Source: Octopus bimaculoides (taxonomy: Eukaryota). From it: DNA of 64,000 nt. Each line of letters opens with the position of its first letter. Positions within the stretch are counted from its first letter, which is position 1. The notes below the pieces were generated by a model, which did no database searches, was not told the DNA's origin, and saw only the letters and a list, made by a program, of their open reading frames with translations. The stretch is from the NCBI RefSeq assembly GCF_001194135.2, contig NC_068987.1, positions 60,074,386 through 60,138,385 of the forward strand. Reading direction: 5' to 3'. Made by a program: the position numbers and the translations under genes. This document shows positions 245 through 48,035 of this stretch, piece by piece.

Positions 245-1020
245 GTGCCCTCGTAAAAATAATTTACCATATATAATGGCCTGAATTGAATCTAAAGCAC
301 TGTTCATAGATGTGGGGTGACATGACGTCACCTTCACCGAGGATACAGCCAAAGACTATTACAGTTAGAAGGAAATTAGTTATCGAAAGACTATTACAGT
401 TAGAAGGAAATTAGTTATCGAAAGACTATTACAGTTAGAAGGAAATTAGTTATCGAGATATGTGGGACATGAGATGGAACATAAGCAAGTCACCTTTTGT
501 TCTGGGTTGTTGTGCAACTGGTCCTGATAGAAGTTCTTTTCATCTGAGAAGAACCAGACCATCTCCGGCTCCAGAGAGTGCTGCAGTTAGTTCAGGAATA
601 TTTTGCCTTCGGTAAGCGGTTCACCTTGGCCTGGGCTCTCAGAATTTCTCCCTTGCACCTCTTGTACGAGTAGTAGTGAAGGTCCTCATTAAGATCCAGT
701 TTTATGGTGGTGATTCCAATTCTCGGCAAAGCTGATTTTGCTCGGATCGTCCATCACCTTGTCCTGCGGTTATTGCATGAATTGCGGCGTGAAGATGTAG
801 TCAAAACACCTGCTGTGTCCCTTTCTGCTGCCCGTGACTTCGTAATTTACATTGCAGCTCTCCATATCACATCTTACAGCTTCACAGTGTTCACAGAGCA
901 TTGAGCAGCAGCCCTGATGTCAGCATTTTGAAACCCAGCGCAAACCATAATACAGGTAACCCTTTTCCAATAATCAGATGGCTCCAGTACTCCATATCGG
1001 CTAACTTCTTCTCATCCACA
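245..1020 (-). mobile_element. Tc1/mariner DD37D (maT-like) transposase relic, N-terminal half to mid-catalytic domain, frameshifted
   Basis: Minus-strand translation gives ...NEDLHYYSYKRCKGEIL...PEMVWFFSDEKNFYQDQLHN... (first catalytic Asp, ~533-553) and ...FGCILGEGDVMSPHIYEQCFRFNSGHY (~270-350), matching DD37D motifs FFSDEK and VMVFG-x-EG-x-VMPPH. Confidence 0.8.
351..455. repeat. Perfect 35-bp tandem triplication inside the transposase relic
   Basis: aaagactattacagttagaaggaaattagttatcg at 351-385, 386-420, 421-455; its reverse complement encodes TNFLLTVIVF, the KTKFP-x-TVMVF segment of the transposase. Confidence 0.95.
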
Positions 1021-1139
1021 ACTTTAATCGATATACATGCCGGCAACGACTGTAGATGACCGCAAACTGGTGACTGTGATATCTCTTAACCGTACAGTTT
1101 CGGCTTTAGACCGAAGCATCGTCAGAAGAGTCGGCACAG

Positions 1140-1454
1140 TTTGGCGGACTGTAACCCGCTTGATTATTATGTGTGGGACGCAGTTGAGCGGGAGAACAAC
1201 AAAACTCCTTGTAACACCAACAATGAACTGAAGGCAAGGATTATGGCAGCATTCACCAACTTAAACAAGGAGATCATCCAGAAGAGTTGCAGAAGATTCC
1301 GAAGTTGTCTGGAGGCTGTAATTGAAGCTAATGGCGATTTTACTGAATAAATTTACTCATTAGTATTTCAAGATATTTTTACGTAATTTTGGTAAATATA
1401 TCTGTTAAAATGAGATGTCAGTATTTTGATTTTTACGTAACGTTGATGGCACTC

Positions 1455-3624: not shown

Positions 3625-3835
3625 ATAGTATGACAACAAAAGAATGAATGAGACCTCGATATTTTGTAAATGGAGGAAATCTGCTCCGGCATCTCATCAG
3701 TTATTAGGACAAACAAAAAGGCATTTTTGTTTGTCTTAATAATTGATGAGATGCCGGAGCAGATTTCTTCCTCGACATCCAAAACTCGGAATTTTATTAT
3801 GGCAACCGAATAATTGTCACATGTTATATTACAGA
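3625..3835. mobile_element. Inverted (tail-to-tail) remnant of a PLE-like terminal repeat forming a 47-bp hairpin
   Basis: Arms 3673-3719 and 3724-3770, loop ggca, only 3 G-T mismatches; 3625-3680 matches the reverse complement of 43993-44047 and 3775-3835 matches 43925-43990. Confidence 0.8.
3738..3798 (+). ncRNA. Degenerate type I hammerhead ribozyme motif (family 1)
   Basis: AATAA-TTGATGA-GATGCCGG...CGACATC-C-AAAA-CTCGGAA-T-T-TTATT; core mutated (C3>T, G12>A). The mirrored arm at 3673-3707 keeps an intact CTGATGA on the minus strand. Confidence 0.65.
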
Positions 3836-8939: not shown

Positions 8940-10071
8940 TAAGTTATCAATTTAATAATTCCATTCAATAAAACCACCATAAGCATCAATAACTGCCTCT
9001 ACGCGGGGTCGAAATCGTTTACAAGCTCAGTTTAAGAGGTCCTTGTTCATATCGGACATGATTTGGCGGCTTTCAAAGAATATTTGGTGCTACGGGGGTG
9101 TTCATTGATATTTTTCTCAATGATTCTCCATACATAGTAGTCCAGTAAAGATCTGGAGGATTAGGAGGCCAAATGTTGGAGGTGATGTGATCATGGAAAT
9201 TATCGGCCATCCATCATCTGAGCCTTGTGTGATGATACAGAATCTTCTTGAAAGACATGTCTTCCAATGCATACACTGTTGATCCAAGGCTTAACAACTT
9301 TATCCAGAACTTCAATATACGCAGCAGCATTCACCCTAAGTCTTTGTGGACAAAAGTGAGAAGGCATCACATGTCCTTCATTGCTAACAACACCCAAAAC
9401 CATGACCCTTACAGAAAATTGTGTGTGCATTACTCTTAGAACCTCAGAAGGGTCCGCACACAGCCATCTGTCACTTTTTCTGTTAGTTTTCTGATCTGGC
9501 CAAAGTTTTTCTCAGCTGAGAAAACCCAAATCACACCATCTTCTGATAGATTTTTAATCTTCTTCAAAAGTCTTTTGGATCTGGTTAAACGGTTTCCTTT
9601 TGTTTTTTCTGACATGAATTGACCTCCCTTCATCACGTAAGATTTCTAAGTGATATCTTCATGCACAACATTTCTGATTGTTTCTTCCGACACACGAAAT
9701 TGTTTTGTAATTGACCTCATTTATTTTCCTAGATTGTCTTCAATGTTTTGATTAACTTCCTGAATAAATTCAGGTGTCCTAATAGAATCTGAGCATTTGG
9801 AATGTTTTTTATACAGGCAATACGCTTCCATCGTCTTTTTCTTACTCACACCGAATCTTGTCGAGAAAAGATCTTGCATCTTTCAGAAAACGAGAAATTT
9901 CTAAATCACCATGCTTACCCTTCAAAGCTACAATCACAGCATGCCTTTTCATTTCATTAGTAAGCATAGGTCCTGTCATTGTTATTTTCTGAAACAAAAG
10001 TTTAATAAAAATTTAGTCAAATAAAATAATGACTAAAAATGCATGTGTCCTCAAATACCGTCCGCACCCTG
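8940..10071 (-). mobile_element. Near full-length Tc1/mariner DD37D element, pseudogenised transposase
   Basis: Minus translation: MLTNEMKRHAVIVALKGKHGDLEISRFL, VIWVFSAEKNF, VMVLGVVSNEGHVMPSHF, FQEDSVSSHKA, WPPNPPDL..DYYVW, RVEAVIDAYGGFIE; 5' end cagggtgcggac next to TA at 10072-10073. Confidence 0.9.
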
Positions 10072-17234: not shown

Positions 17235-17460
17235 TTGTTGTTTAGCTCCATATCAGTAATATTGGAGCAGGTCTATGATCAAAAGAGTCCCAGAAATGAC
17301 TATTCAGTCTTTTATATAATCAGGACTACATTATTTAATGTGTCTTTTTTTTTATTTTGGTTCAGAGAGCAGTGAGTGATTTGTGGGAGATATTTCTTCC
17401 ATTTCTACCACGAAAACCGACGATTTTAAATGTTCCTCGGTGATTTATTGATACTTATAT
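17235..17460 (-). mobile_element. SINE-like body/tail with (AAC)n end, directly downstream of the 5S-like head
   Basis: gttgttgtttagctccatatcag...gcaggtctatgatcaaaag...ggactacattat...gatttgtgggagatatt; a more degraded relative lies at ~51520-51720. Confidence 0.5.
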
Positions 17461-17566
17461 CACCTGTGTTTTCCAAGCTGTCACCCATCTAAATACTAAC
17501 CAAGCTGGAGATTGCTAAATTTCGGTGATCAGAAGGAAGCTGGCGTTCTCGGTGTGATGTGAGCAT
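17461..17566 (-). pseudogene. 5S rRNA-derived sequence (pseudogene or SINE3 head)
   Basis: Minus strand ...tctgatcaccgaaatttagcaatctccagcttggttagtatttagatgggtgacagcttggaaaacacaggtg aligns by eye with invertebrate 5S GATCACCGAAGTTAAGCAACGTCGAGC..GGTTAGTACTTGGATGGGTGACCGCCTGGGAATACCGGGTG, including the A box, intermediate element and C box. Confidence 0.8.
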
Positions 17567-19069
17567 AATCTAAACAAAAAAGATATTGTTACTGGTGAGT
17601 GATATTTGGCAAGATTTAATCTGTTGAGATATTAAATGCGTAACTAACTGCAAGTAAAATTTATTATTGGAATGTTCATCTTTAGTAGCCATGAAGAGGT
17701 TTTGTTGTATTTGTGACCTTTGTACAATATTTTTGTCATTACAGAAGTTGTAATATCGTGTTTTTGCTATAATTAGAACTATAGTTCAGGAAAAGTCTAT
17801 ATCAATTAGCATTTTCTCTCAAGAAAAATGCGCTACAGTGACATTTATATTTTTTTCTGGAAACCACTTCTATAAGGAGTGTTATTGAACTATGGCAAAC
17901 GTTTGTGAACAATCGCCAGAAGTAGCATCTAAATAGCATCAACGTGCTGAAAGAAAATAAGTACTAGTTAATAAAATGGTTAAGTGGATTCAAATTCGGC
18001 CAAATAGAAATTGGATTTTTTAAAAAAGAAAATAATTGTATTCAATTGCTATCTCATAGTCTTCAGTTTTCTAATCTTAATATTTTTTTTTAAACATTAG
18101 ATTATGATTTCAAGGGTTAAAACATTTTAAAACGCCTTTATATTAAAGTATCACACTAGTATAAGATTCAATTAAAGGAAATAATGGCTGATTCTATATG
18201 TTTTTTTTTGCTCTAAGTTACTTATTTTCGACTCTAAATTGTCTGTGGCTCGACAACAACAATCTTCAAGTAGCGACTCACATAATTTCAGTTTTGAATA
18301 GATAGCAACTGTATTTAATTTCAAAAATATCGTCTACCCTCAGTGCAAACGCTCAACAATACAATGTTAAGATTTAGTGTCAAAGAAATAAGTTTCACGA
18401 GATATTGAATAAAGCTGTACAATTATTAAAAAATTTCCCGAAGATTTGTAATACATTTATTGCTTCTTCCATTACTTTTATTTTCTCAAAGTATTAGTTA
18501 ATATAAAGGAAATGTAACAATAAAAGATATATTACACTGTATTCTTGTGCATAGTGCCATATAATGTAGAAGGAAAGCAGTGTTTAACAAAATGGAGGGT
18601 GTAAGTGAAATCTGTTAACAAAATGATAAAGCTATTCAAGAAAGAAATATTGTTTTATTGGGATATGCTGTGAAATGACACGAGTACAAAATTGTCTCGT
18701 GTATCTCAAATTATTGAGTTACATCCCTTATCATACAGCATTTGAATATGAATTCTTAATTCATTTCTTACGTAAGAAAGTAATATGTTTTAAATGCCTC
18801 CTACAACTGTATGTATGATGCTTATAAATTTCAGTTCAATGATTTTAATCCCGACGTCAGATTCCTCTGGTTGATAGAAATGATCGACAAGTGTCACTTA
18901 CATTACCTTCACCACATTCTGTTCGGAGGCAAAATATCAGTTAACACTATAGAAAGCCCTGTTGCAAGTTATAGGGGGAAAAGAGATTAGCATTCATATA
19001 GTACAATACCATTTGGACATCCAGTCTTCGGTAACGTAACAGTACGAGTTGAAAGTTATTTTTGTTATC

Positions 19070-28364: not shown

Positions 28365-29165
28365 AAGTTGCATTCCAGAGGATTATAGATTTTTTTCAGG
28401 AGAGGCATTTATTAATTGCAAAGGTAGGACTTTCTGAATTCAACATACTTCCATGTGAAGGCCACATGGAAGTCCTTCAAAGTAAAGGTGGCCAGGACCT
28501 TTGACATGGCCTCCTTCATCTCCTTCAGCTTGGAAAATAACCGAAAAATAAATAGGGAGCAAGGTCTGTATTACAGAGAGGGTGAGGGACAGTTTTGATG
28601 CCCATCTCTGGTTTCTAGGGTGGAATTGTGAACTGGTCCATTGTTCTGGTTCATGTAGTCTGGCTTTTTGTGACGAAATTTCTTTTTGAACTCCGTCAAA
28701 ACCTCCACAAAGTACTCTTTGATGATCGTCTGATTGGAGGGAACCCAGTAGATGCAGATGATGCCCTTGCTGCCGAAAAAGGAAACCCTCATCAGCTTCC
28801 TCGTGGACTTGTTTTGCCTGGCATCTCGAGCCAGTGACAAACGAGCTGACTCATAGAAATTAATCCATAAGTAATCAGAAGCATTTCATAAATTTGTGTA
28901 GCATTTTTGTCCAGTTTAACACAAAGCTTTATTGCAAATTGTCTTCACGTACCGACAGCATTCTACAAACTAGTCAGTTATGAAATACAATGTTTAGCAC
29001 GGTGTGTTCACAATGCTGTTACAGCCGTATCATGCAATTGGGAATAAAACAAAGTTGGCAGGTCAGCTTATTATATGTATGGTAACGTTATACTAAAATT
29101 ATTATAATTAAGACAGTTGTAAGTGCCTCTTCTCCTCATTCAAAACTTCTGGAATGTACCTTGCA
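28362..29165 (-). mobile_element. Internally deleted mariner (DD34D) with both TIRs
   Basis: Minus translation AIKLCVKLDKNATQIYEMLLITYG joined to ARQNKSTRKLMRVSFFGSKGIICIYWVPSNQTIIKEYFVEVL; TIRs tgcaagttgcattccagag (28362) and cttctggaatgtaccttgca (29146-29165, followed by TA). Confidence 0.85.
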
Positions 29166-41008: not shown

Positions 41009-41215
41009 TCTTTTACTCTTTACTCATTTACTTGTTTCAGTCATTTGACTGCAGCCATGCTGGAGCACCGCCTTTAGTCGAGCAAATCGACCCCAGGACT
41101 TATTCTTTGTAAGGTTAGTACTTATTCTATCGGTCGAACCGCTAAGTCTCGGGGTCGTAAACACACCAGCATCGATTGTCAAGCGATGTTGGGGGGACAA
41201 ACACAGACACACAAA
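41007..41215 (-). mobile_element. SINE tail module C
   Basis: ctcttttactctttactc..cttgtttcagtcatttgactgcagccatgctggagcaccgcc...ggggggacaaacacagac. Confidence 0.9.
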
Positions 41216-41899
41216 TATATATATACATATAAATATATATATATACATATATGACATGAGCTGTTCGCATGAATTTAGATAATTCATTCTGTTGATGTAA
41301 TACTGACTGACATACATAAAAATATTTTTAAACAAAATTAAATTTGCCCTTTCGAGTTGGAAAGATACGACAAAAGCCCAGTGATAAATATTGGAGGCTG
41401 TGAAAGAACAAGGGAAATAATTTCAAGATATCATGAGTGAATATCACAGCAAATTGAATTTTCAAGCTTGACAGATGAAAACTGTCATTGTATCTAGTTT
41501 TGTTTCTTCTATTCTTTTATTGTATTATAATATACAGCAGTGTGTACAGTAATGCAAAGTTGCATAACACTACCATACTATGGAGAATTCTACAAAAAAC
41601 AAAATAAATAAAATCTAGTAGAAAGCTATAGAATCTTTATTAGTAGCAAAATACGATAATGAACAATTTAAAATCTGTTAACGACGTTTTCATCAATCAC
41701 AATATATTTCTGTAACTTGACTCCTCACCACTACACACCAACAGCAATCATTAACCTTCAATGAAAGTCGCCTCATTAAGATGACAAGACTTTTGTGAGA
41801 CTCTTGAAGCGTTAATGGGTTTAGGAAGGTTGTTCTAAAAATGGACTAAAATGGACTAAAAACTAAAAATGGACTTTGAAATGTTGATGCTCCAAATTA

Positions 41900-42976: not shown

Positions 42977-43037
42977 GATAAAACTCCGAGTTTCGGATGC
43001 CGGGGTGGAAACCCACGCCGCCATCTCTTCAGTTATC
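42977..43037 (-). ncRNA. Type I minimal hammerhead ribozyme motif with intact core (family 1, copy A)
   Basis: GATAA-CTGAAGA-GATGGCGG-cgtgggtttccacc-CCGGCATC-C-GAAA-CTC-G-GAG-T-T-TTATC: stem I GATAA/TTATC, CUGANGA and GAAA core, stem II 7 of 8 pairs, stem III ACTC-G-GAGT, GUU triplet. Confidence 0.75.
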
Positions 43038-43039
43038 TG

Positions 43040-43160
43040 AGCTTAAAAGGTCTGTATTTTTCTCCAAAAGCTTCTTAGAGAATAGTTCCCTTAATGGTAT
43101 AGGTATGTTTTTCATAGAATAATCGAGGTAGTAGGCGTCCATATTGAATTCTTCTGAGGG
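43040..43160 (-). mobile_element. Penelope-like ORF N-terminal fragment
   Basis: EEFNMDAYYLDYSMKNIPIPLRELFSKKLLEK resembles the YS.KNIPIP...Y.K.L.EK N-terminus of PLE ORFs; lies between two hammerhead-bearing repeats. Confidence 0.55.
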
Positions 43161-43213
<53 letters not shown>

Positions 43214-43218
43214 TATAT

Positions 43219-43380
43219 AGGTGCAGGTGTGGTTATGTGGTAAGAAATTTGCTTCCCAACCACATAGTTCCGGACTCAGTTCCACTGCGTGGCACCTTGG
43301 ATGTCTTCTATTGTAGCCTCGGGCCAACTAACGAGTCTCGTAAGTAGATTTGGTAGACGGAAACTGAAAGAAGCCCGTCG
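43219..43380 (+). mobile_element. SINE head module B
   Basis: ggtgtggttatgtggtaagaaatttgcttcccaaccacatagttccggactcagttccactgcgtggcaccttgg...gaaagaagcccgtcg. Confidence 0.9.
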
Positions 43381-43541
43381 AATATGTGTGTATATATATA
43401 TGTGTGTGTGTGTGTGTGCGTGTGCGTGCGTGAGCGTGTGTGCGTGCGTGCGACGGCCTTTTTTACTTTTACTTGTTTCAGTCATCAGCCGTTACCATTC
43501 TGCTTGCGTACGAAGAAGAATGACACTTATTCGGTAGCCAT

Positions 43542-43602
43542 GATAAAACTCCGAGTTTCGGATGCCGGGGTGGGAGCCCACGCCAACATCCCTTCAGTTA
43601 TC
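43542..43602 (-). ncRNA. Hammerhead motif family 1, copy B (core CTGAAGG)
   Basis: Same fold as copy A; stem II GATGTTGG/CCGGCATC with two G-U pairs; A9>G here, whereas the post-gap duplicate at 43625-43654 has CTGAAGA. Confidence 0.65.
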
Positions 43603-43889
43603 CAGCCATTGAAANNNNNNNNNNGGAGCCCACGCCAACATCTCTTCAGTTATCCAGCCATTGAAAGTTCCTGTGAAAAATGACCGTTAAACAAAGAGAA
43701 ATTACTGTGTGGTTGACCGTTAATAAGACAAAAGAGCTACAGACCGCTAAGTAACGGGAGGGGGTAAAGGTAAGGGAGTAGAAAAGTCTATACTTAGTGG
43801 TCTATGGCTCTTTTGTCTTAATAACGGTCAACCACACAGTAATTTCCCTTTGTTTAACGGTCATTTTTCACAGGAATTTTCAATGGCCA

Positions 43890-43950
43890 GGTAACTGAAT
43901 AGATGTTGGTGTGGGTTCCCACCCCGGCATCCGAAACTCGGAGTTTTATC
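43890..43950 (+). ncRNA. Hammerhead motif family 1, copy C (core CTGAATA)
   Basis: GGTAA-CTGAATA-GATGTTGG...CCGGCATC-C-GAAA-CTCGGAG-T-T-TTATC; G8>T. Confidence 0.65.
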
Positions 43951-44061
43951 ATGGCTACCGAATAATTGTCACATATTATATTTACAGATAAATTCCTCTA
44001 TTTACATAATATCGAGGTCTCTTTCTTTCTTTTGTTGTCCTTTCTATCAATACATATATAT

Positions 44062-44478
44062 GGCTGTGTGGTAAGTAGCTTGCTGACCAACCACATGGTT
44101 CTGGGTTCAATCCCACTCGTGGCACCTTGGGCCAATGTCTTCTACTATAGCCTCGGGCCGACCAAAGCTTTGTGAGTGGATTTAGTAGACGGAAACTGAA
44201 AGAAGCCCGTCGAATATATGTATATATATATGTATGTATGTATGTGTGTGTGTGTGTGTATATGTTAGTGTGTCTGTGTTTGTCCCCCCAACATCGCTTG
44301 ACAACCGATGGTGGTGTGTTTACGTCCCCGTAACATAGCGGTTCGGCAAAAGAGACCGATAGAATAAGTACTAGGCTTCCAAAGAATAAGTCCTAGGGTC
44401 GACTTGATCGACTAGAGGCGGTGCTCCAGCACGGCCGCAGTCAAATGACTGAAACAAATAAAAGAGTAAAAGAGAGAA
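44062..44478 (+). mobile_element. Full composite SINE: tRNA-like head B + internal (TATG)/(TG) microsatellite + tail C
   Basis: ggctgtgtggtaagtagc..gggttcaatccc (A/B boxes) 44062-44215; microsatellite to ~44270; tail ending gactgaaacaaataaaagagtaaaagag. Confidence 0.9.
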
Positions 44479-47194: not shown

Positions 47195-47475
47195 TCTTTT
47201 ACTTGTTTCAGTCATTAGACAGCTGTCTTTCTGAAAGTTGTTTTAGTCAAACGTCACGACGTCAACACTTTTTGTCAATGGGTTTCTGTGCCAAAACGCT
47301 AAGTTGCAGCGACGCAAAACAACCAGCACCATTGTGTATATACGACAGGCTTCATTCAGTTTCTTTCAACCAAATCCGCTCACTATGGTTTATTCGGCTC
47401 GCGGCTATAGTAGAAGACACTCAGCCAATGTGCTACGCGGTGAAACTGAACCCTGAACCATGTGACAGGGAAGTC
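47195..47475 (-). mobile_element. Degraded B-C composite SINE
   Basis: ttttacttgtttcagtcattagac...acgacaggcttcattcagtttc...ctatagtagaagacact...gaaccatgtg. Confidence 0.7.
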
Positions 47476-47729: not shown

Positions 47730-48035
47730 CCCAAAGACTCATCCCTTTTATGATGCTCCCCAGTATCTTCTTACTTTGTGGAATGGACATGATGGATATC
47801 ATTTCAGTATTCTACATATTGAACCTGCAACACGAGAGCCAATTACAAAGCAAAAGGTGTTGTCAAATGACTTCTATTCTTACCAACTGATGTTAAGGCC
47901 ACAACTATCAAATCAATTACACATGTATCGTATTCTATTTCAACAATACTTGGTTGATATGTATGTTAAAGTTGAGAGTGAGAGTCTCCTCTACATTCGT
48001 AACAATCAAAAAAGTTAAGGGCTAAAAATCATAAC
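47730..48035 (+). mobile_element. Helitron Rep-domain fragment
   Basis: THPFYDAPQYLLTLWNGHDGYHF...KVLSNDFYSYQLMLRP...LFQQYLVDMYVKVESESLLYIRNNQK matches Helitron YDALQYPL..GEDGYH, FY.YRLM.R and QQ..VDMY.KIE.ERL.YIR.NQ. Confidence 0.9.

What the first reader, a model, noticed from the sequence alone, without database searches (positions are those of the whole stretch)
42977..43037. Core-intact minimal hammerhead ribozyme in a Penelope-like terminal repeat
Seen: the minus strand folds as a type I hammerhead with stem I GATAA/TTATC, core CUGAAGA and GAAA, stem II GATGGCGG/CCGGCATC plus an inner GTGG/CCAC hairpin, a tiny stem III ACTC-G-GAGT and a GUU triplet. It sits directly downstream of a PLE-like ORF start (YSMKNIPIP). 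Known: Penelope-like elements carry minimal type I hammerheads whose short palindromic stem III favours cleavage as dimers. Inference: this may be an unannotated self-cleaving RNA. A bulged C beside the G10.1-C11.1 pair and the GUU triplet may slow it.
Basis: partly seen in the sequence, partly recalled or inferred. Interest (0 to 1): 0.85.

Follow-up and report, generated by a model that had tools for sequence, protein, structure and literature searches.

The report
Decayed retrotransposon hammerhead ribozyme relic
The sequence really has the shape of a small self-cutting RNA (a hammerhead ribozyme) of the kind that Penelope-like jumping genes carry, but it lies in a broken, protein-less fragment of such an element among mutated sister copies, so it is an ordinary genomic fossil whose activity is untested.

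Summary
The motif is at the stated coordinates on the minus strand (43037..42977). All 11 core nucleotides are present, plus A15.1-U16.1, G10.1-C11.1 and U17. Predicted cleavage is between 42982 and 42981.

A relaxed type I hammerhead descriptor finds it, against 0.004 hits per shuffled window, so it is not chance. No Rfam hammerhead model matches, even at E<=10.

It deviates in three ways:
- an extra C between C11.1 and G12, present in every copy;
- a G/G mismatch in helix II;
- a competing GAAACUC-G-GAGUUUU near-palindrome.

It belongs to a repeat family with three or four full and one or two partial copies in the window. Their layout matches published Penelope-like element (PLE) insertion features:
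- the hammerhead lies about 40-100 nt from the 3' end;
- the 3' ends abut (TA)n;
- 5'-truncated copies sit head to head.

The sister copies carry inactivating core changes (A9G, G8U, C3U+G12A) at the neutral rate. Copy A's intact core is therefore expected by chance.

The "PLE-like ORF start" is not supported. No reverse transcriptase or GIY-YIG endonuclease lies within 36-50 kb, and there is no terminal-repeat pair.

Verdict: a relic of a known kind of PLE-type minimal hammerhead. Self-cleavage is possible but doubtful. Low interest.

The parts
42977..43037 (-). Copy A: hammerhead-like motif with an intact core. Stem I 5' strand 43037-43033; CUGAAGA 43032-43026; helix II hairpin 43025-42996; extra C 42995; G12A13A14 42994-42992; helix III ACUCGGAGU 42991-42983; U17 42982; stem I 3' strand 42981-42977. 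Predicted cleavage between 42982 and 42981.
   Evidence: model R1, 90.7 bits
42918..42976 (-). 3' tail of copy A, homologous to the tail of copy D. Homology ends at ACATAATAT, after which unique AT-rich DNA follows.
   Evidence: BLAST (92.8% over 125 nt with 43888-44012)
43038..43162 (-). Unique 125-nt stretch 5' of copy A. It holds the 37-codon ORF MDAYYLDYSMKNIPIP...SSDN, which stops at the UGA of the CUGA core. It is unrelated to the 5' flank of copies B, C and D. No PLE homology was found.
43163..43225 (.). (TA)n microsatellite bordering the unit that contains copy A
43521..43602 (-). Copy B: hammerhead 43602-43542 with core CUGAAGG (A9 to G), plus 21 nt of tail, then truncated
   Evidence: family D6, 93%; 88.2 bits
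43625..43753 (-). Copy C: 5' half of the hammerhead (43660-43625, intact CUGAAGA) plus its upstream flank. It forms the left arm of the head-to-head inverted repeat. It is separated from B by a 10-N gap (43615-43624) whose 42-nt flanks are 98% identical, so B and C are probably one copy.
   Evidence: (D7, I1, I4)
43791..44049 (+). Copy D: upstream flank 43791-43889, hammerhead 43890-43950 with core CUGAAUA (G8 to U), and 3' tail 43951-44049 ending at a short TA run. It is the right arm of the inverted repeat (129-nt arms, 91% complementary, 37-nt spacer 43754-43790).
   Evidence: 88.1 bits
3738..3837 (+). Copy E, a diverged member (about 82% identity): hammerhead 3738-3798 with UUGAUGA and CAAAA (C3 to U, G12 to A), then a 39-nt tail ending in (TA)n
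   Evidence: 78.7 bits
3641..3705 (-). Copy E': head-to-head partner of E. AAUAACUGAUGAGAUGCCGGAGCAGAUUUC (canonical CUGAUGA) is fused by an internal deletion to the end of the 3' tail.
   Evidence: 17.4 bits

Best explanation
Copy A is one of several dead, 5'-truncated 3'-terminal fragments of a hammerhead-bearing retroelement. The element was of the Penelope-like type, or a protein-less element mobilised by one.

Inferred from published PLE biology: in the active ancestor the minimal type I hammerhead lay about 40-100 nt from the 3' end of the inserted unit. Because its helix III is too short to be stable, two copies in one tandem or read-through transcript, or two transcripts, would pair through the near-palindrome ACUCGGAGU. 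Each core would then cut the other copy's GUU site and trim the element RNA.

Shown here: the copies in this window have no reverse transcriptase or endonuclease. They accumulate substitutions in core and non-core positions alike, and sit among short interspersed repeats. Copy A simply has not yet been hit in the core.

If transcribed, A might still cleave weakly as a homodimer. In an A-B heterodimer only A's core would be competent, and it would cut B's site. This is unproven. It is made less likely by the extra C between C11.1 and G12, the G/G mismatch in helix II, and a competing helix that pairs G12-A14 with U17-U1.2.
For: - All core positions, A15.1-U16.1, G10.1-C11.1 and H17 are present.
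- The descriptor hits against 0.004 expected per shuffle.
- Four full copies keep the three helices: 95.2% of cells paired, against 33-58% with partners slid by 1-3 columns. There are two compensatory changes, both in copy E: stem I G-C to A-U, and inner helix II G-C to A-U.
- N7 varies (A or U) while the other core positions were ancestrally canonical; CUGAUGA survives in E'.
- Architecture matches metazoan PLE minimal hammerheads: helix II 7-8 bp, helix I 4-5 bp, palindromic 15.2-16.2, and paired motifs 100-700 bp apart on opposite strands (PMC4209133).
- Head-to-head inverted 5'-truncated copies with different truncation points (C/D and E'/E), a hammerhead near the 3' end, (TA)n at the ends and an assembly gap inside the inverted pair match the PLE insertion features described in PMC8557442.
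- The distance from the hammerhead to the 3' end (about 100 nt in D) parallels the Anolis Poseidon element, where reverse transcription starts 111-118 bp into an ORF that begins at helix II (PMC11167929).
- Neutral decay: in A, B and D there are 2 changes in 39 core cells and 6 in 144 other cells, counted from alignment A3.
Against: - No Rfam hammerhead family matches, even at E<=10 in an 86-nt search.
- The published PLE consensus has its unpaired nucleotide between A9 and G10.1. Here it lies on the other strand, between C11.1 and G12. I found no tested precedent for that.
- No reverse transcriptase or GIY-YIG domain in 36-50 kb, and no PLE homology of any flanking ORF. The link to PLEs rests on architecture only.
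- The hammerhead fold is not the predicted minimum: -15.5 against -19.4 kcal/mol for the monomer, and -44.9 against -52.7 for the double hammerhead versus the dimer minimum. The z-score is only -1.6.
- Covariation is not significant with four sequences (120 of 500 shuffles reach it).
- No copies could be retrieved from outside the window.
Confidence: 0.65

Rival explanations
1. The family is a short protein-less hammerhead element of its own: a retrozyme-like or SINE-like non-autonomous element copied in trans by a PLE, not the truncated end of an autonomous PLE. The 125 nt upstream of copy A would then be part of such a short unit bounded by (TA)n.
For: No coding capacity next to any of the copies. 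The frame from the AUG at the start of helix II stops after 20 codons in every copy. A 2026 preprint argues that animal retrozymes derive from PLE terminal regions. Copy A's unit is bounded by (TA)n on its 5' side.
Against: No head-to-tail tandem unit of 170-400 bp as in animal retrozymes. A and B share only the ribozyme plus 21 nt. The 5' flanks differ between A and B/C/D, and the truncation points vary, as expected for 5'-truncated copies of something longer.
Confidence: 0.17
2. The hammerhead resemblance is incidental. The repeat is a foldback or MITE-like DNA element, or a retroelement end whose GC-rich 30-nt hairpin serves another purpose such as protein binding or priming. CUGAAGA...GAAA plus short flanking complementarity arose by chance.
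For: Rfam is negative. The extra C breaks the canonical junction. Only the helix II hairpin is robustly predicted by folding. Large inverted repeats are present.
Against: The descriptor's expectation is 0.004 per window. The diverged copies E and E' point to an ancestral canonical CUGAUGA and keep stem I through a compensatory change. The inner ends of the inverted pairs differ between loci, which fits variable 5' truncation and not fixed terminal inverted repeats.
Confidence: 0.13
3. Copy A is a host-retained, functional self-cleaving RNA kept by selection, for example to process a transcript at this locus.
For: Its core is intact while the neighbouring copies are mutated.
Against: At the observed 4.4% divergence, 13 constrained positions stay intact with probability about 0.56. 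One intact copy among three is therefore expected without selection (computed). A also carries a helix II mismatch. There is no gene context, and the flanks are repeats and unique AT-rich DNA.
Confidence: 0.03

Closest known systems
Minimal type I hammerhead ribozymes of metazoan Penelope-like elements (Cervera & de la Pena 2014, PMC4209133; Lunse, Weinberg & Breaker 2017, which I could not read)
   Same: Canonical core. Long helix II (8 bp plus a 4-bp extension). Open 5-bp helix I without loop-loop contacts. G10.1-C11.1. A very short near-palindromic helix III that implies dimers. Many diverged copies per genome, mostly solitary, often paired on opposite strands a few hundred bp apart.
   Different: The unpaired nucleotide at the base of helix II is on the 3' strand (between C11.1 and G12), not between A9 and G10.1. 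The helix III palindrome has an odd central G, which gives a G/G mismatch in the dimer. No PLE ORF lies nearby.
Insertion architecture of Penelope-like elements (Craig et al. 2021, PMC8557442; Anolis Poseidon element, PMC11167929)
   Same: Hammerhead near the 3' end. An inverted 5'-truncated copy joined head to head. Variable 3' ends. (TA)n at the insertion ends. An AUG at the start of helix II, as in the Anolis element.
   Different: No reverse transcriptase or GIY-YIG ORF and no direct pseudo-LTR pair in the window. The frame from the helix II AUG closes after 20 codons.
Animal non-LTR retrozymes and satellite hammerheads (Cervera & de la Pena 2020, PMC7229834)
   Same: Type I hammerhead with a weak helix III in a non-coding repeat. 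Dimer-dependent cleavage.
   Different: No 170-400 bp head-to-tail tandem array. Helix II is long, not 4 bp. No loop 1-loop 2 tertiary contact motif.
Natural hammerhead core variants with insertions or a mismatch at the base of helix II (Perreault et al. 2011, PMC3088659; extra nucleotide after A9, De la Pena & Flores 2001 as cited in PMC4209133)
   Same: One extra nucleotide at the edge of the core that could flip out. Precedents that retain activity: the U13a insertion in the GAAA strand, an extra nucleotide between A9 and G10.1, and a U10.1/U11.1 mismatch.
   Different: I found no tested precedent for an insertion exactly between C11.1 and G12.

Membership tests
Hammerhead ribozyme, type I | Core C3 U4 G5 A6 N7 G8 A9 and G12 A13 A14 | tested here: met
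   CUGAAGA at 43032-43026 and GAA at 42994-42992
Hammerhead ribozyme, type I | A15.1-U16.1 pair and a cleavage-site nucleotide H17 that is not G | tested here: met
   A 42991 and U 42983; U17 at 42982, giving a GUU triplet
Hammerhead ribozyme, type I | Three helices abutting the core directly, with G10.1-C11.1 next to A9 and G12, open at helix I | tested here: inconclusive
   Helices I (5 bp), II (7 of 8 bp plus 4 bp) and III (3-4 bp) are present. One extra C (42995) separates C11.1 from G12 in all copies.
Hammerhead ribozyme, type I | Match to a curated covariance model (Rfam hammerhead families) | tested here: not met
   No hammerhead hit at gathering score, nor at E<=10 in 601-nt and 86-nt searches. 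The published PLE minimal motifs needed their own descriptor (PMC4209133), so this carries limited weight.
Hammerhead ribozyme, type I | Covariation supporting the helices | tested here: inconclusive
   95.2% of cells paired and 2 compensatory pairs, but only 4 sequences; 120 of 500 shuffles reach the score
Hammerhead ribozyme, type I | Site-specific self-cleavage in Mg2+ | not testable with these tools
   Needs in vitro transcription. The thermodynamic model places the active fold 3.9 kcal/mol above the minimum for the monomer and 7.8 for the dimer.
PLE minimal hammerhead (Cervera & de la Pena 2014) | Helix II longer than usual (6-8 bp) and short open helix I (4-5 bp) | tested here: met
   8-position outer helix II plus a 4-bp extension; 5-bp helix I
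PLE minimal hammerhead (Cervera & de la Pena 2014) | [quoted passage not shown] | tested here: not met
   A9 is followed directly by G10.1. The unpaired C is on the opposite strand.
PLE minimal hammerhead (Cervera & de la Pena 2014) | Palindromic 15.2-16.2 and loop 3, allowing a dimeric helix III | tested here: met
   CUC-G-GAG. The dimer gives 8 bp with a central G/G mismatch. The double-hammerhead structure scores -44.9 kcal/mol against 2 x -19.4 for two monomers.
PLE minimal hammerhead (Cervera & de la Pena 2014) | Located in the flanking repeats of an element encoding reverse transcriptase and a GIY-YIG endonuclease | tested here: not met
   No such Pfam domain among the non-low-complexity stop-to-stop segments of at least 45 aa in 36-50 kb. 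Flanking peptides have no homologues. The paper notes that most genomic motifs are likewise solitary.
Penelope-like element insertion | Inverted 5'-truncated copy joined head to head, with variable truncation | tested here: met
   C/D arms 43625-43753 and 43791-43919 with a 37-nt spacer; E'/E with a 4-nt spacer and a different truncation point
Penelope-like element insertion | Hammerhead close to the 3' end; microsatellite, often (TA)n, at the insertion site | tested here: met
   Tails of 39 nt (E) and about 99 nt (D) end in TA runs. E' also ends in (TA)n, and a (TA)n lies on the 5' side of A's unit.
Animal non-LTR retrozyme | Head-to-tail tandem repeats of about 170-400 bp, each with one type I hammerhead | tested here: not met
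   A and B are 565 nt apart and share only 82 nt. The interval is a microsatellite plus an interspersed repeat.

The most novel reading that the evidence does not exclude
The family represents a previously undescribed variant of the PLE-type hammerhead. In it the usual flipped-out nucleotide at the base of helix II has moved to the 3' strand, between C11.1 and G12, and the ribozyme still cleaves as a dimer. The second descriptor hit at 1130..1083 also carries a C at this position, which would fit a lineage-specific core variant.
Probability: 0.2. Interest if true: 0.3.

Novelty: new member of a known kind. Interest (0 to 1): 0.15.

Why it matters
It matters little. Minimal hammerheads in Penelope-like elements have been known since 2014 and number in the thousands per genome. 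This is one decayed locus of that kind.

Two modest points of value:
- The whole local family shares an extra C between C11.1 and G12. Published descriptors and Rfam models would probably miss it. If it is active, search descriptors for this ribozyme class should allow a 3'-side bulge.
- The locus shows why an intact core in a repeat copy is not evidence of function. Sister copies decay at the neutral rate.

Tried and rejected
- Rfam scans of the whole window (gathering score) and of 601-nt and 86-nt slices at E<=10 gave no hammerhead. The hits were AT-microsatellite look-alikes of miRNA families, discarded.
- The upstream peptide was searched three ways. The only hit, P0001, is a 1752-aa PAN/apple-repeat protein that matches LLEKNTDLLSSD repeatedly. 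I rejected it as spurious.
- I tried to collect family copies from outside the window. I searched with alignments of the frames that are open across the repeat, antisense (A1) and sense (A4). I looked up an overlapping ORF by exact sequence. I ran DNA pattern scans of metagenome and viral contigs. Nothing was found except two chance matches in unrelated contigs, L001 and L002.
- A covariance model built from the four copies found no further full copies in the window.
- ARAGORN found no tRNA genes in 42-45 kb.
- A terminal-inverted-repeat or MITE reading was rejected, because the inner ends of the inverted pairs differ between loci.
- A retrozyme tandem array was rejected, because there is no repeat unit.
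- Lunse et al. 2017 (PMC5785218) is not held in the library. Its consensus could not be compared.
- The source organism was not identified. The flanking interspersed repeats remind me of cephalopod SINEs; that is memory only and unverified.

Full report
**1. What is there**

On the minus strand, 43037..42977 reads GAUAA CUGAAGA GAUGGCGGCGUGGGUUUCCACCCCGGCAUC C GAA ACUCGGAGU U UUAUC. It parses as a type I hammerhead:
- helix I GAUAA/UUAUC, 5 bp, open;
- core C3-A9 = CUGAAGA;
- helix II = 8 positions GAUGGCGG/CCGGCAUC, with one G/G mismatch at 43021/43000, then a C/C internal loop and GUGG-GUUU-CCAC;
- an extra C (42995);
- G12 A13 A14;
- A15.1...U16.1 enclosing CUC-G-GAG;
- U17 (42982);
- the 3' strand of helix I.

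The options are 3 bp with a CGG triloop, or an intermolecular 8-bp helix with a central G/G mismatch.

**2. Chance**

The simple pattern CUGANGA-N10-40-GAAA occurs 14 times in the window, against 4.5 expected. That pattern alone means little.

A full descriptor requires helix I >=4 bp, the core, 0-1 extra nt on each side of a G..C-closed helix II >=4 bp, GAA, A15.1/U16.1 around a hairpin or palindrome, and H17. It gives two hits in the real window. Over 1000 dinucleotide-preserving shuffles the mean is 0.004. The motif is therefore not a chance arrangement.

The second hit, at 1130..1083 on the minus strand, is described under section 8.

**3. Curated models**

No Rfam hammerhead family matches. 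This holds at gathering score over the window and at E<=10 in 601-nt and 86-nt searches.

Its weight is limited. The metazoan PLE motifs were found only with a purpose-built minimal descriptor (PMC4209133). This motif has a 30-nt helix II and almost no helix III.

**4. It is a repeat family**

BLAST and repeat finding show further copies:

| Copy | Position and strand | State of the hammerhead |
|---|---|---|
| B | 43602..43521, minus | core CUGAAGG (A9 to G) |
| C | 43660..43625, minus | 5' half only, CUGAAGA intact |
| D | 43890-43950, plus | CUGAAUA (G8 to U) |
| E | 3738-3798, plus | about 82% identity; UUGAUGA and CAAAA (C3 to U, G12 to A) |
| E' | 3705..3641, minus | AAUAACUGAUGAGAUGCCGGAG..., then an internal deletion |

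A covariance model built from A, B, D and E finds no other full copy in the 64 kb.

B and C lie on either side of a 10-N gap. The 42-nt flanks of that gap are 98% identical (family D7). They are probably one copy duplicated by the assembler. One version has an intact 5' core half and the other has A9G.

All copies that cover the position (A, B, D, E) keep the extra C (CAUCCGAAA or CAUCCAAAA). It is therefore ancestral to the family and not a lesion of copy A.

**5. Structure support**

On the four full copies, 95.2% of pair cells are standard pairs. With partners slid by 1-3 columns the figure is 33-58%.

There are two compensatory changes, both in copy E: helix I G-C to A-U, and inner helix II G-C to A-U. 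Helix II C-G to U-G wobbles occur in B and D. With four sequences none of this is significant (120 of 500 shuffles).

N7 is A in the A-D group and U in E and E', as expected for the one free core position.

Folding does not favour the active junction:
- Only the helix II hairpin is robustly predicted. The z-score is -1.6 for A.
- For the monomer, the hammerhead fold scores -15.5 against a minimum of -19.4 kcal/mol.
- For the dimer, the double hammerhead scores -44.9 against a minimum of -52.7.
- The competitor is the longer near-palindrome GAAACUC-G-GAGUUUU. It pairs G12-A14 with U17, U1.1 and U1.2. This follows from U at positions 17 and 1.1.

Nearest-neighbour models ignore the tertiary contacts of the core. 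This result is therefore a caution, not a refutation.

**6. What kind of element**

The copies look like PLE insertions as described in the literature:
- C and D are joined head to head: arms 43625-43753 and 43791-43919, 91% complementary, 37-nt spacer. E' and E are joined head to head at a different point, 4-nt spacer, only about 19 nt upstream of the ribozyme. PLE copies often have an inverted 5'-truncated copy at the 5' end, and this causes assembly problems (PMC8557442). A gap lies exactly there.
- The differing inner ends argue for variable 5' truncation and against fixed terminal inverted repeats.
- The ribozyme lies near the 3' end. Tails of 39 nt (E) and about 99 nt (D) run into TA repeats. 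(TA)n is a preferred target of several PLE clades.
- In the Anolis Poseidon element the ORF begins at helix II, and reverse transcription starts 111-118 bp into the ORF, so genomic copies end about 100 nt past the ribozyme (PMC11167929). Here an AUG also sits at the start of helix II (GAUGG). Its frame closes after 20 codons in every copy.
- The motif's proportions match the published metazoan PLE consensus: helix II 7-8 bp, helix I 4-5 bp, G10.1-C11.1, a palindromic helix III, and pairs of motifs 100-700 bp apart on opposite strands.

Against membership:
- The published consensus has its unpaired nucleotide between A9 and G10.1, not between C11.1 and G12.
- There is no PLE protein anywhere near. 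Stop-to-stop segments of at least 45 aa from all six frames of 36-50 kb were scanned after I dropped low-complexity ones. They gave no reverse transcriptase or GIY-YIG match, only a weak Helitron_like_N.
- The peptide upstream of B, C and D has no Pfam match.

**7. The 'PLE-like ORF start'**

The ORF exists (ATG 43142, 37 codons, stop = UGA of the CUGA core).
- Its 44-aa extended peptide has no relative in the word-indexed search.
- A full HMMER pass over 1.84 billion representatives gave one hit, a PAN/apple-repeat protein that matches LLEKNTDLLSSD many times over. I treat it as spurious.
- Pfam gave nothing.
- The 125 nt that carry it are unique in the window. They are unrelated to the 5' flank of B, C and D. 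Homology between A and the other copies begins at helix I.

Copy A is most simply a copy truncated at, or within a few nucleotides of, the 5' edge of the ribozyme and lying next to unrelated sequence. A short query cannot exclude distant PLE homology, but nothing supports it.

**8. Function now, and the second hit**

Relative to the A/B/D consensus there are 8 substitutions in 183 positions (4.4%). Two fall in the 39 core cells and 6 in the 144 others. E has 2 of 13 core positions changed at about 18% overall divergence. So there is no purifying selection on the core.

At 4.4% divergence a copy keeps 13 constrained positions intact with probability about 0.56. One intact copy among three is what neutrality predicts.

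In a double hammerhead each core cuts the partner's site (established geometry, Forster et al. 1988 as cited). A read-through minus-strand transcript containing B and A would, at best, be cut at B's site by A's core. A's own site needs a second intact copy.

GUU is a permitted but slower triplet than GUC (my own knowledge of the NUH rule).

Precedents exist for tolerated irregularities at the edge of the core:
- an extra nucleotide after A9;
- a U13a insertion in the GAAA strand;
- a U10.1/U11.1 mismatch (PMC3088659; PMC4209133).

I found none for an insertion between C11.1 and G12.

Even canonical PLE minimal hammerheads cleave poorly in vitro. In the Anolis element, cleavage was not needed for insertion in vitro.

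The second descriptor hit is at 1130..1083 on the minus strand: CUCUU CUGACGA U GCUU-CGGUCUA-AAGC C GAAA CUGUACGG UU AAGAG. Its helix III is 3 bp with a palindromic GUAC loop. It has an extra U after A9 and, again, a C before G12. By my reading it lies antisense in a mariner-like transposase remnant. It is single-copy in the window and has no Rfam match. It remains unresolved.

**9. Verdict**

This is a hammerhead motif of the Penelope-like minimal kind. It sits in a decayed, protein-less, 5'-truncated retroelement fragment. It is not in a demonstrable terminal repeat next to a PLE ORF.

It is a new member of a known kind, of low interest. The only mildly unusual feature is the family-wide C between C11.1 and G12.

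No copies from outside the window could be obtained. The family consensus and the cleavage assay remain the decisive tests.

Noticed in passing
window 1083-1130, minus strand: Second hit of the type I hammerhead descriptor: CUCUU|CUGACGA|U|GCUU-CGGUCUA-AAGC|C|GAAA|CUGUACGG|UU|AAGAG. Helix III is 3 bp with a palindromic GUAC loop. There is an extra U after A9 and also an extra C before G12. By my reading it lies antisense in a mariner-like transposase C-terminal remnant (...NPLDYYVWDAVERENNK...). It is single-copy in the window and has no Rfam hit. Expected by chance at about 0.004 per window.
   Followed up: partly
window 43573-43614 and 43625-43666, flanking the N gap 43615-43624: The 42 nt on both sides of a 10-N gap are 98% identical. 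This is probably one repeat copy duplicated by the assembler inside a head-to-head inverted pair. The single difference is in the ribozyme core (CUGAAGG versus CUGAAGA).
   Followed up: partly
window 17452-17570, minus strand: 5S rRNA match just above the Rfam gathering score (39.6 against 38 bits) with many non-canonical pairs. It looks like a 5S pseudogene or a 5S-derived repeat, not a working gene.
   Followed up: no
window 43226-43460, 44062-44470, 41019-41252 (inverted), 47337-47437 (inverted): Several copies of one short interspersed repeat with TG/TA microsatellite tails directly flank the hammerhead copies. ARAGORN calls no tRNA in 42-45 kb. From memory they resemble cephalopod SINEs; this is unverified and the organism was not identified.
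   Followed up: partly
window 43813-43894 (copy D) compared with 3724-3742 (copy E): Upstream of the ribozyme, copies C and D carry about 75 nt that E lacks. The insert consists of two units of about 35 nt that each start TAACGGTCA, between two TAAC repeats. It could be an internal duplication or a template-switch product.
   Followed up: no
window 3641-3705, minus strand (copy E'): An internal deletion joins the helix II loop (GCAGAUUUC) to the end of the 3' tail, at a shared CAGAT(T/A) microhomology. It looks like template switching or a microhomology-mediated deletion.
   Followed up: no
window about 47750-48020, plus strand: Weak Pfam Helitron_like_N match (E 4.3e-06, 27.5 bits, just under the curated cut-off of 28.9), probably in the ORF ...DFYSYQLMLRP...LFQQYLVDMYVKVESESLLYIRNNQ. 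Likely a Helitron remnant.
   Followed up: partly
window 28574-28885, minus strand: Mariner-type transposase remnant (Pfam Transposase_1, E 5.8e-06, 26.5 bits, above the cut-off). Similar-looking fragments at 600-1330 (plus) and 9203-9511 (minus) gave no Pfam hit.
   Followed up: partly
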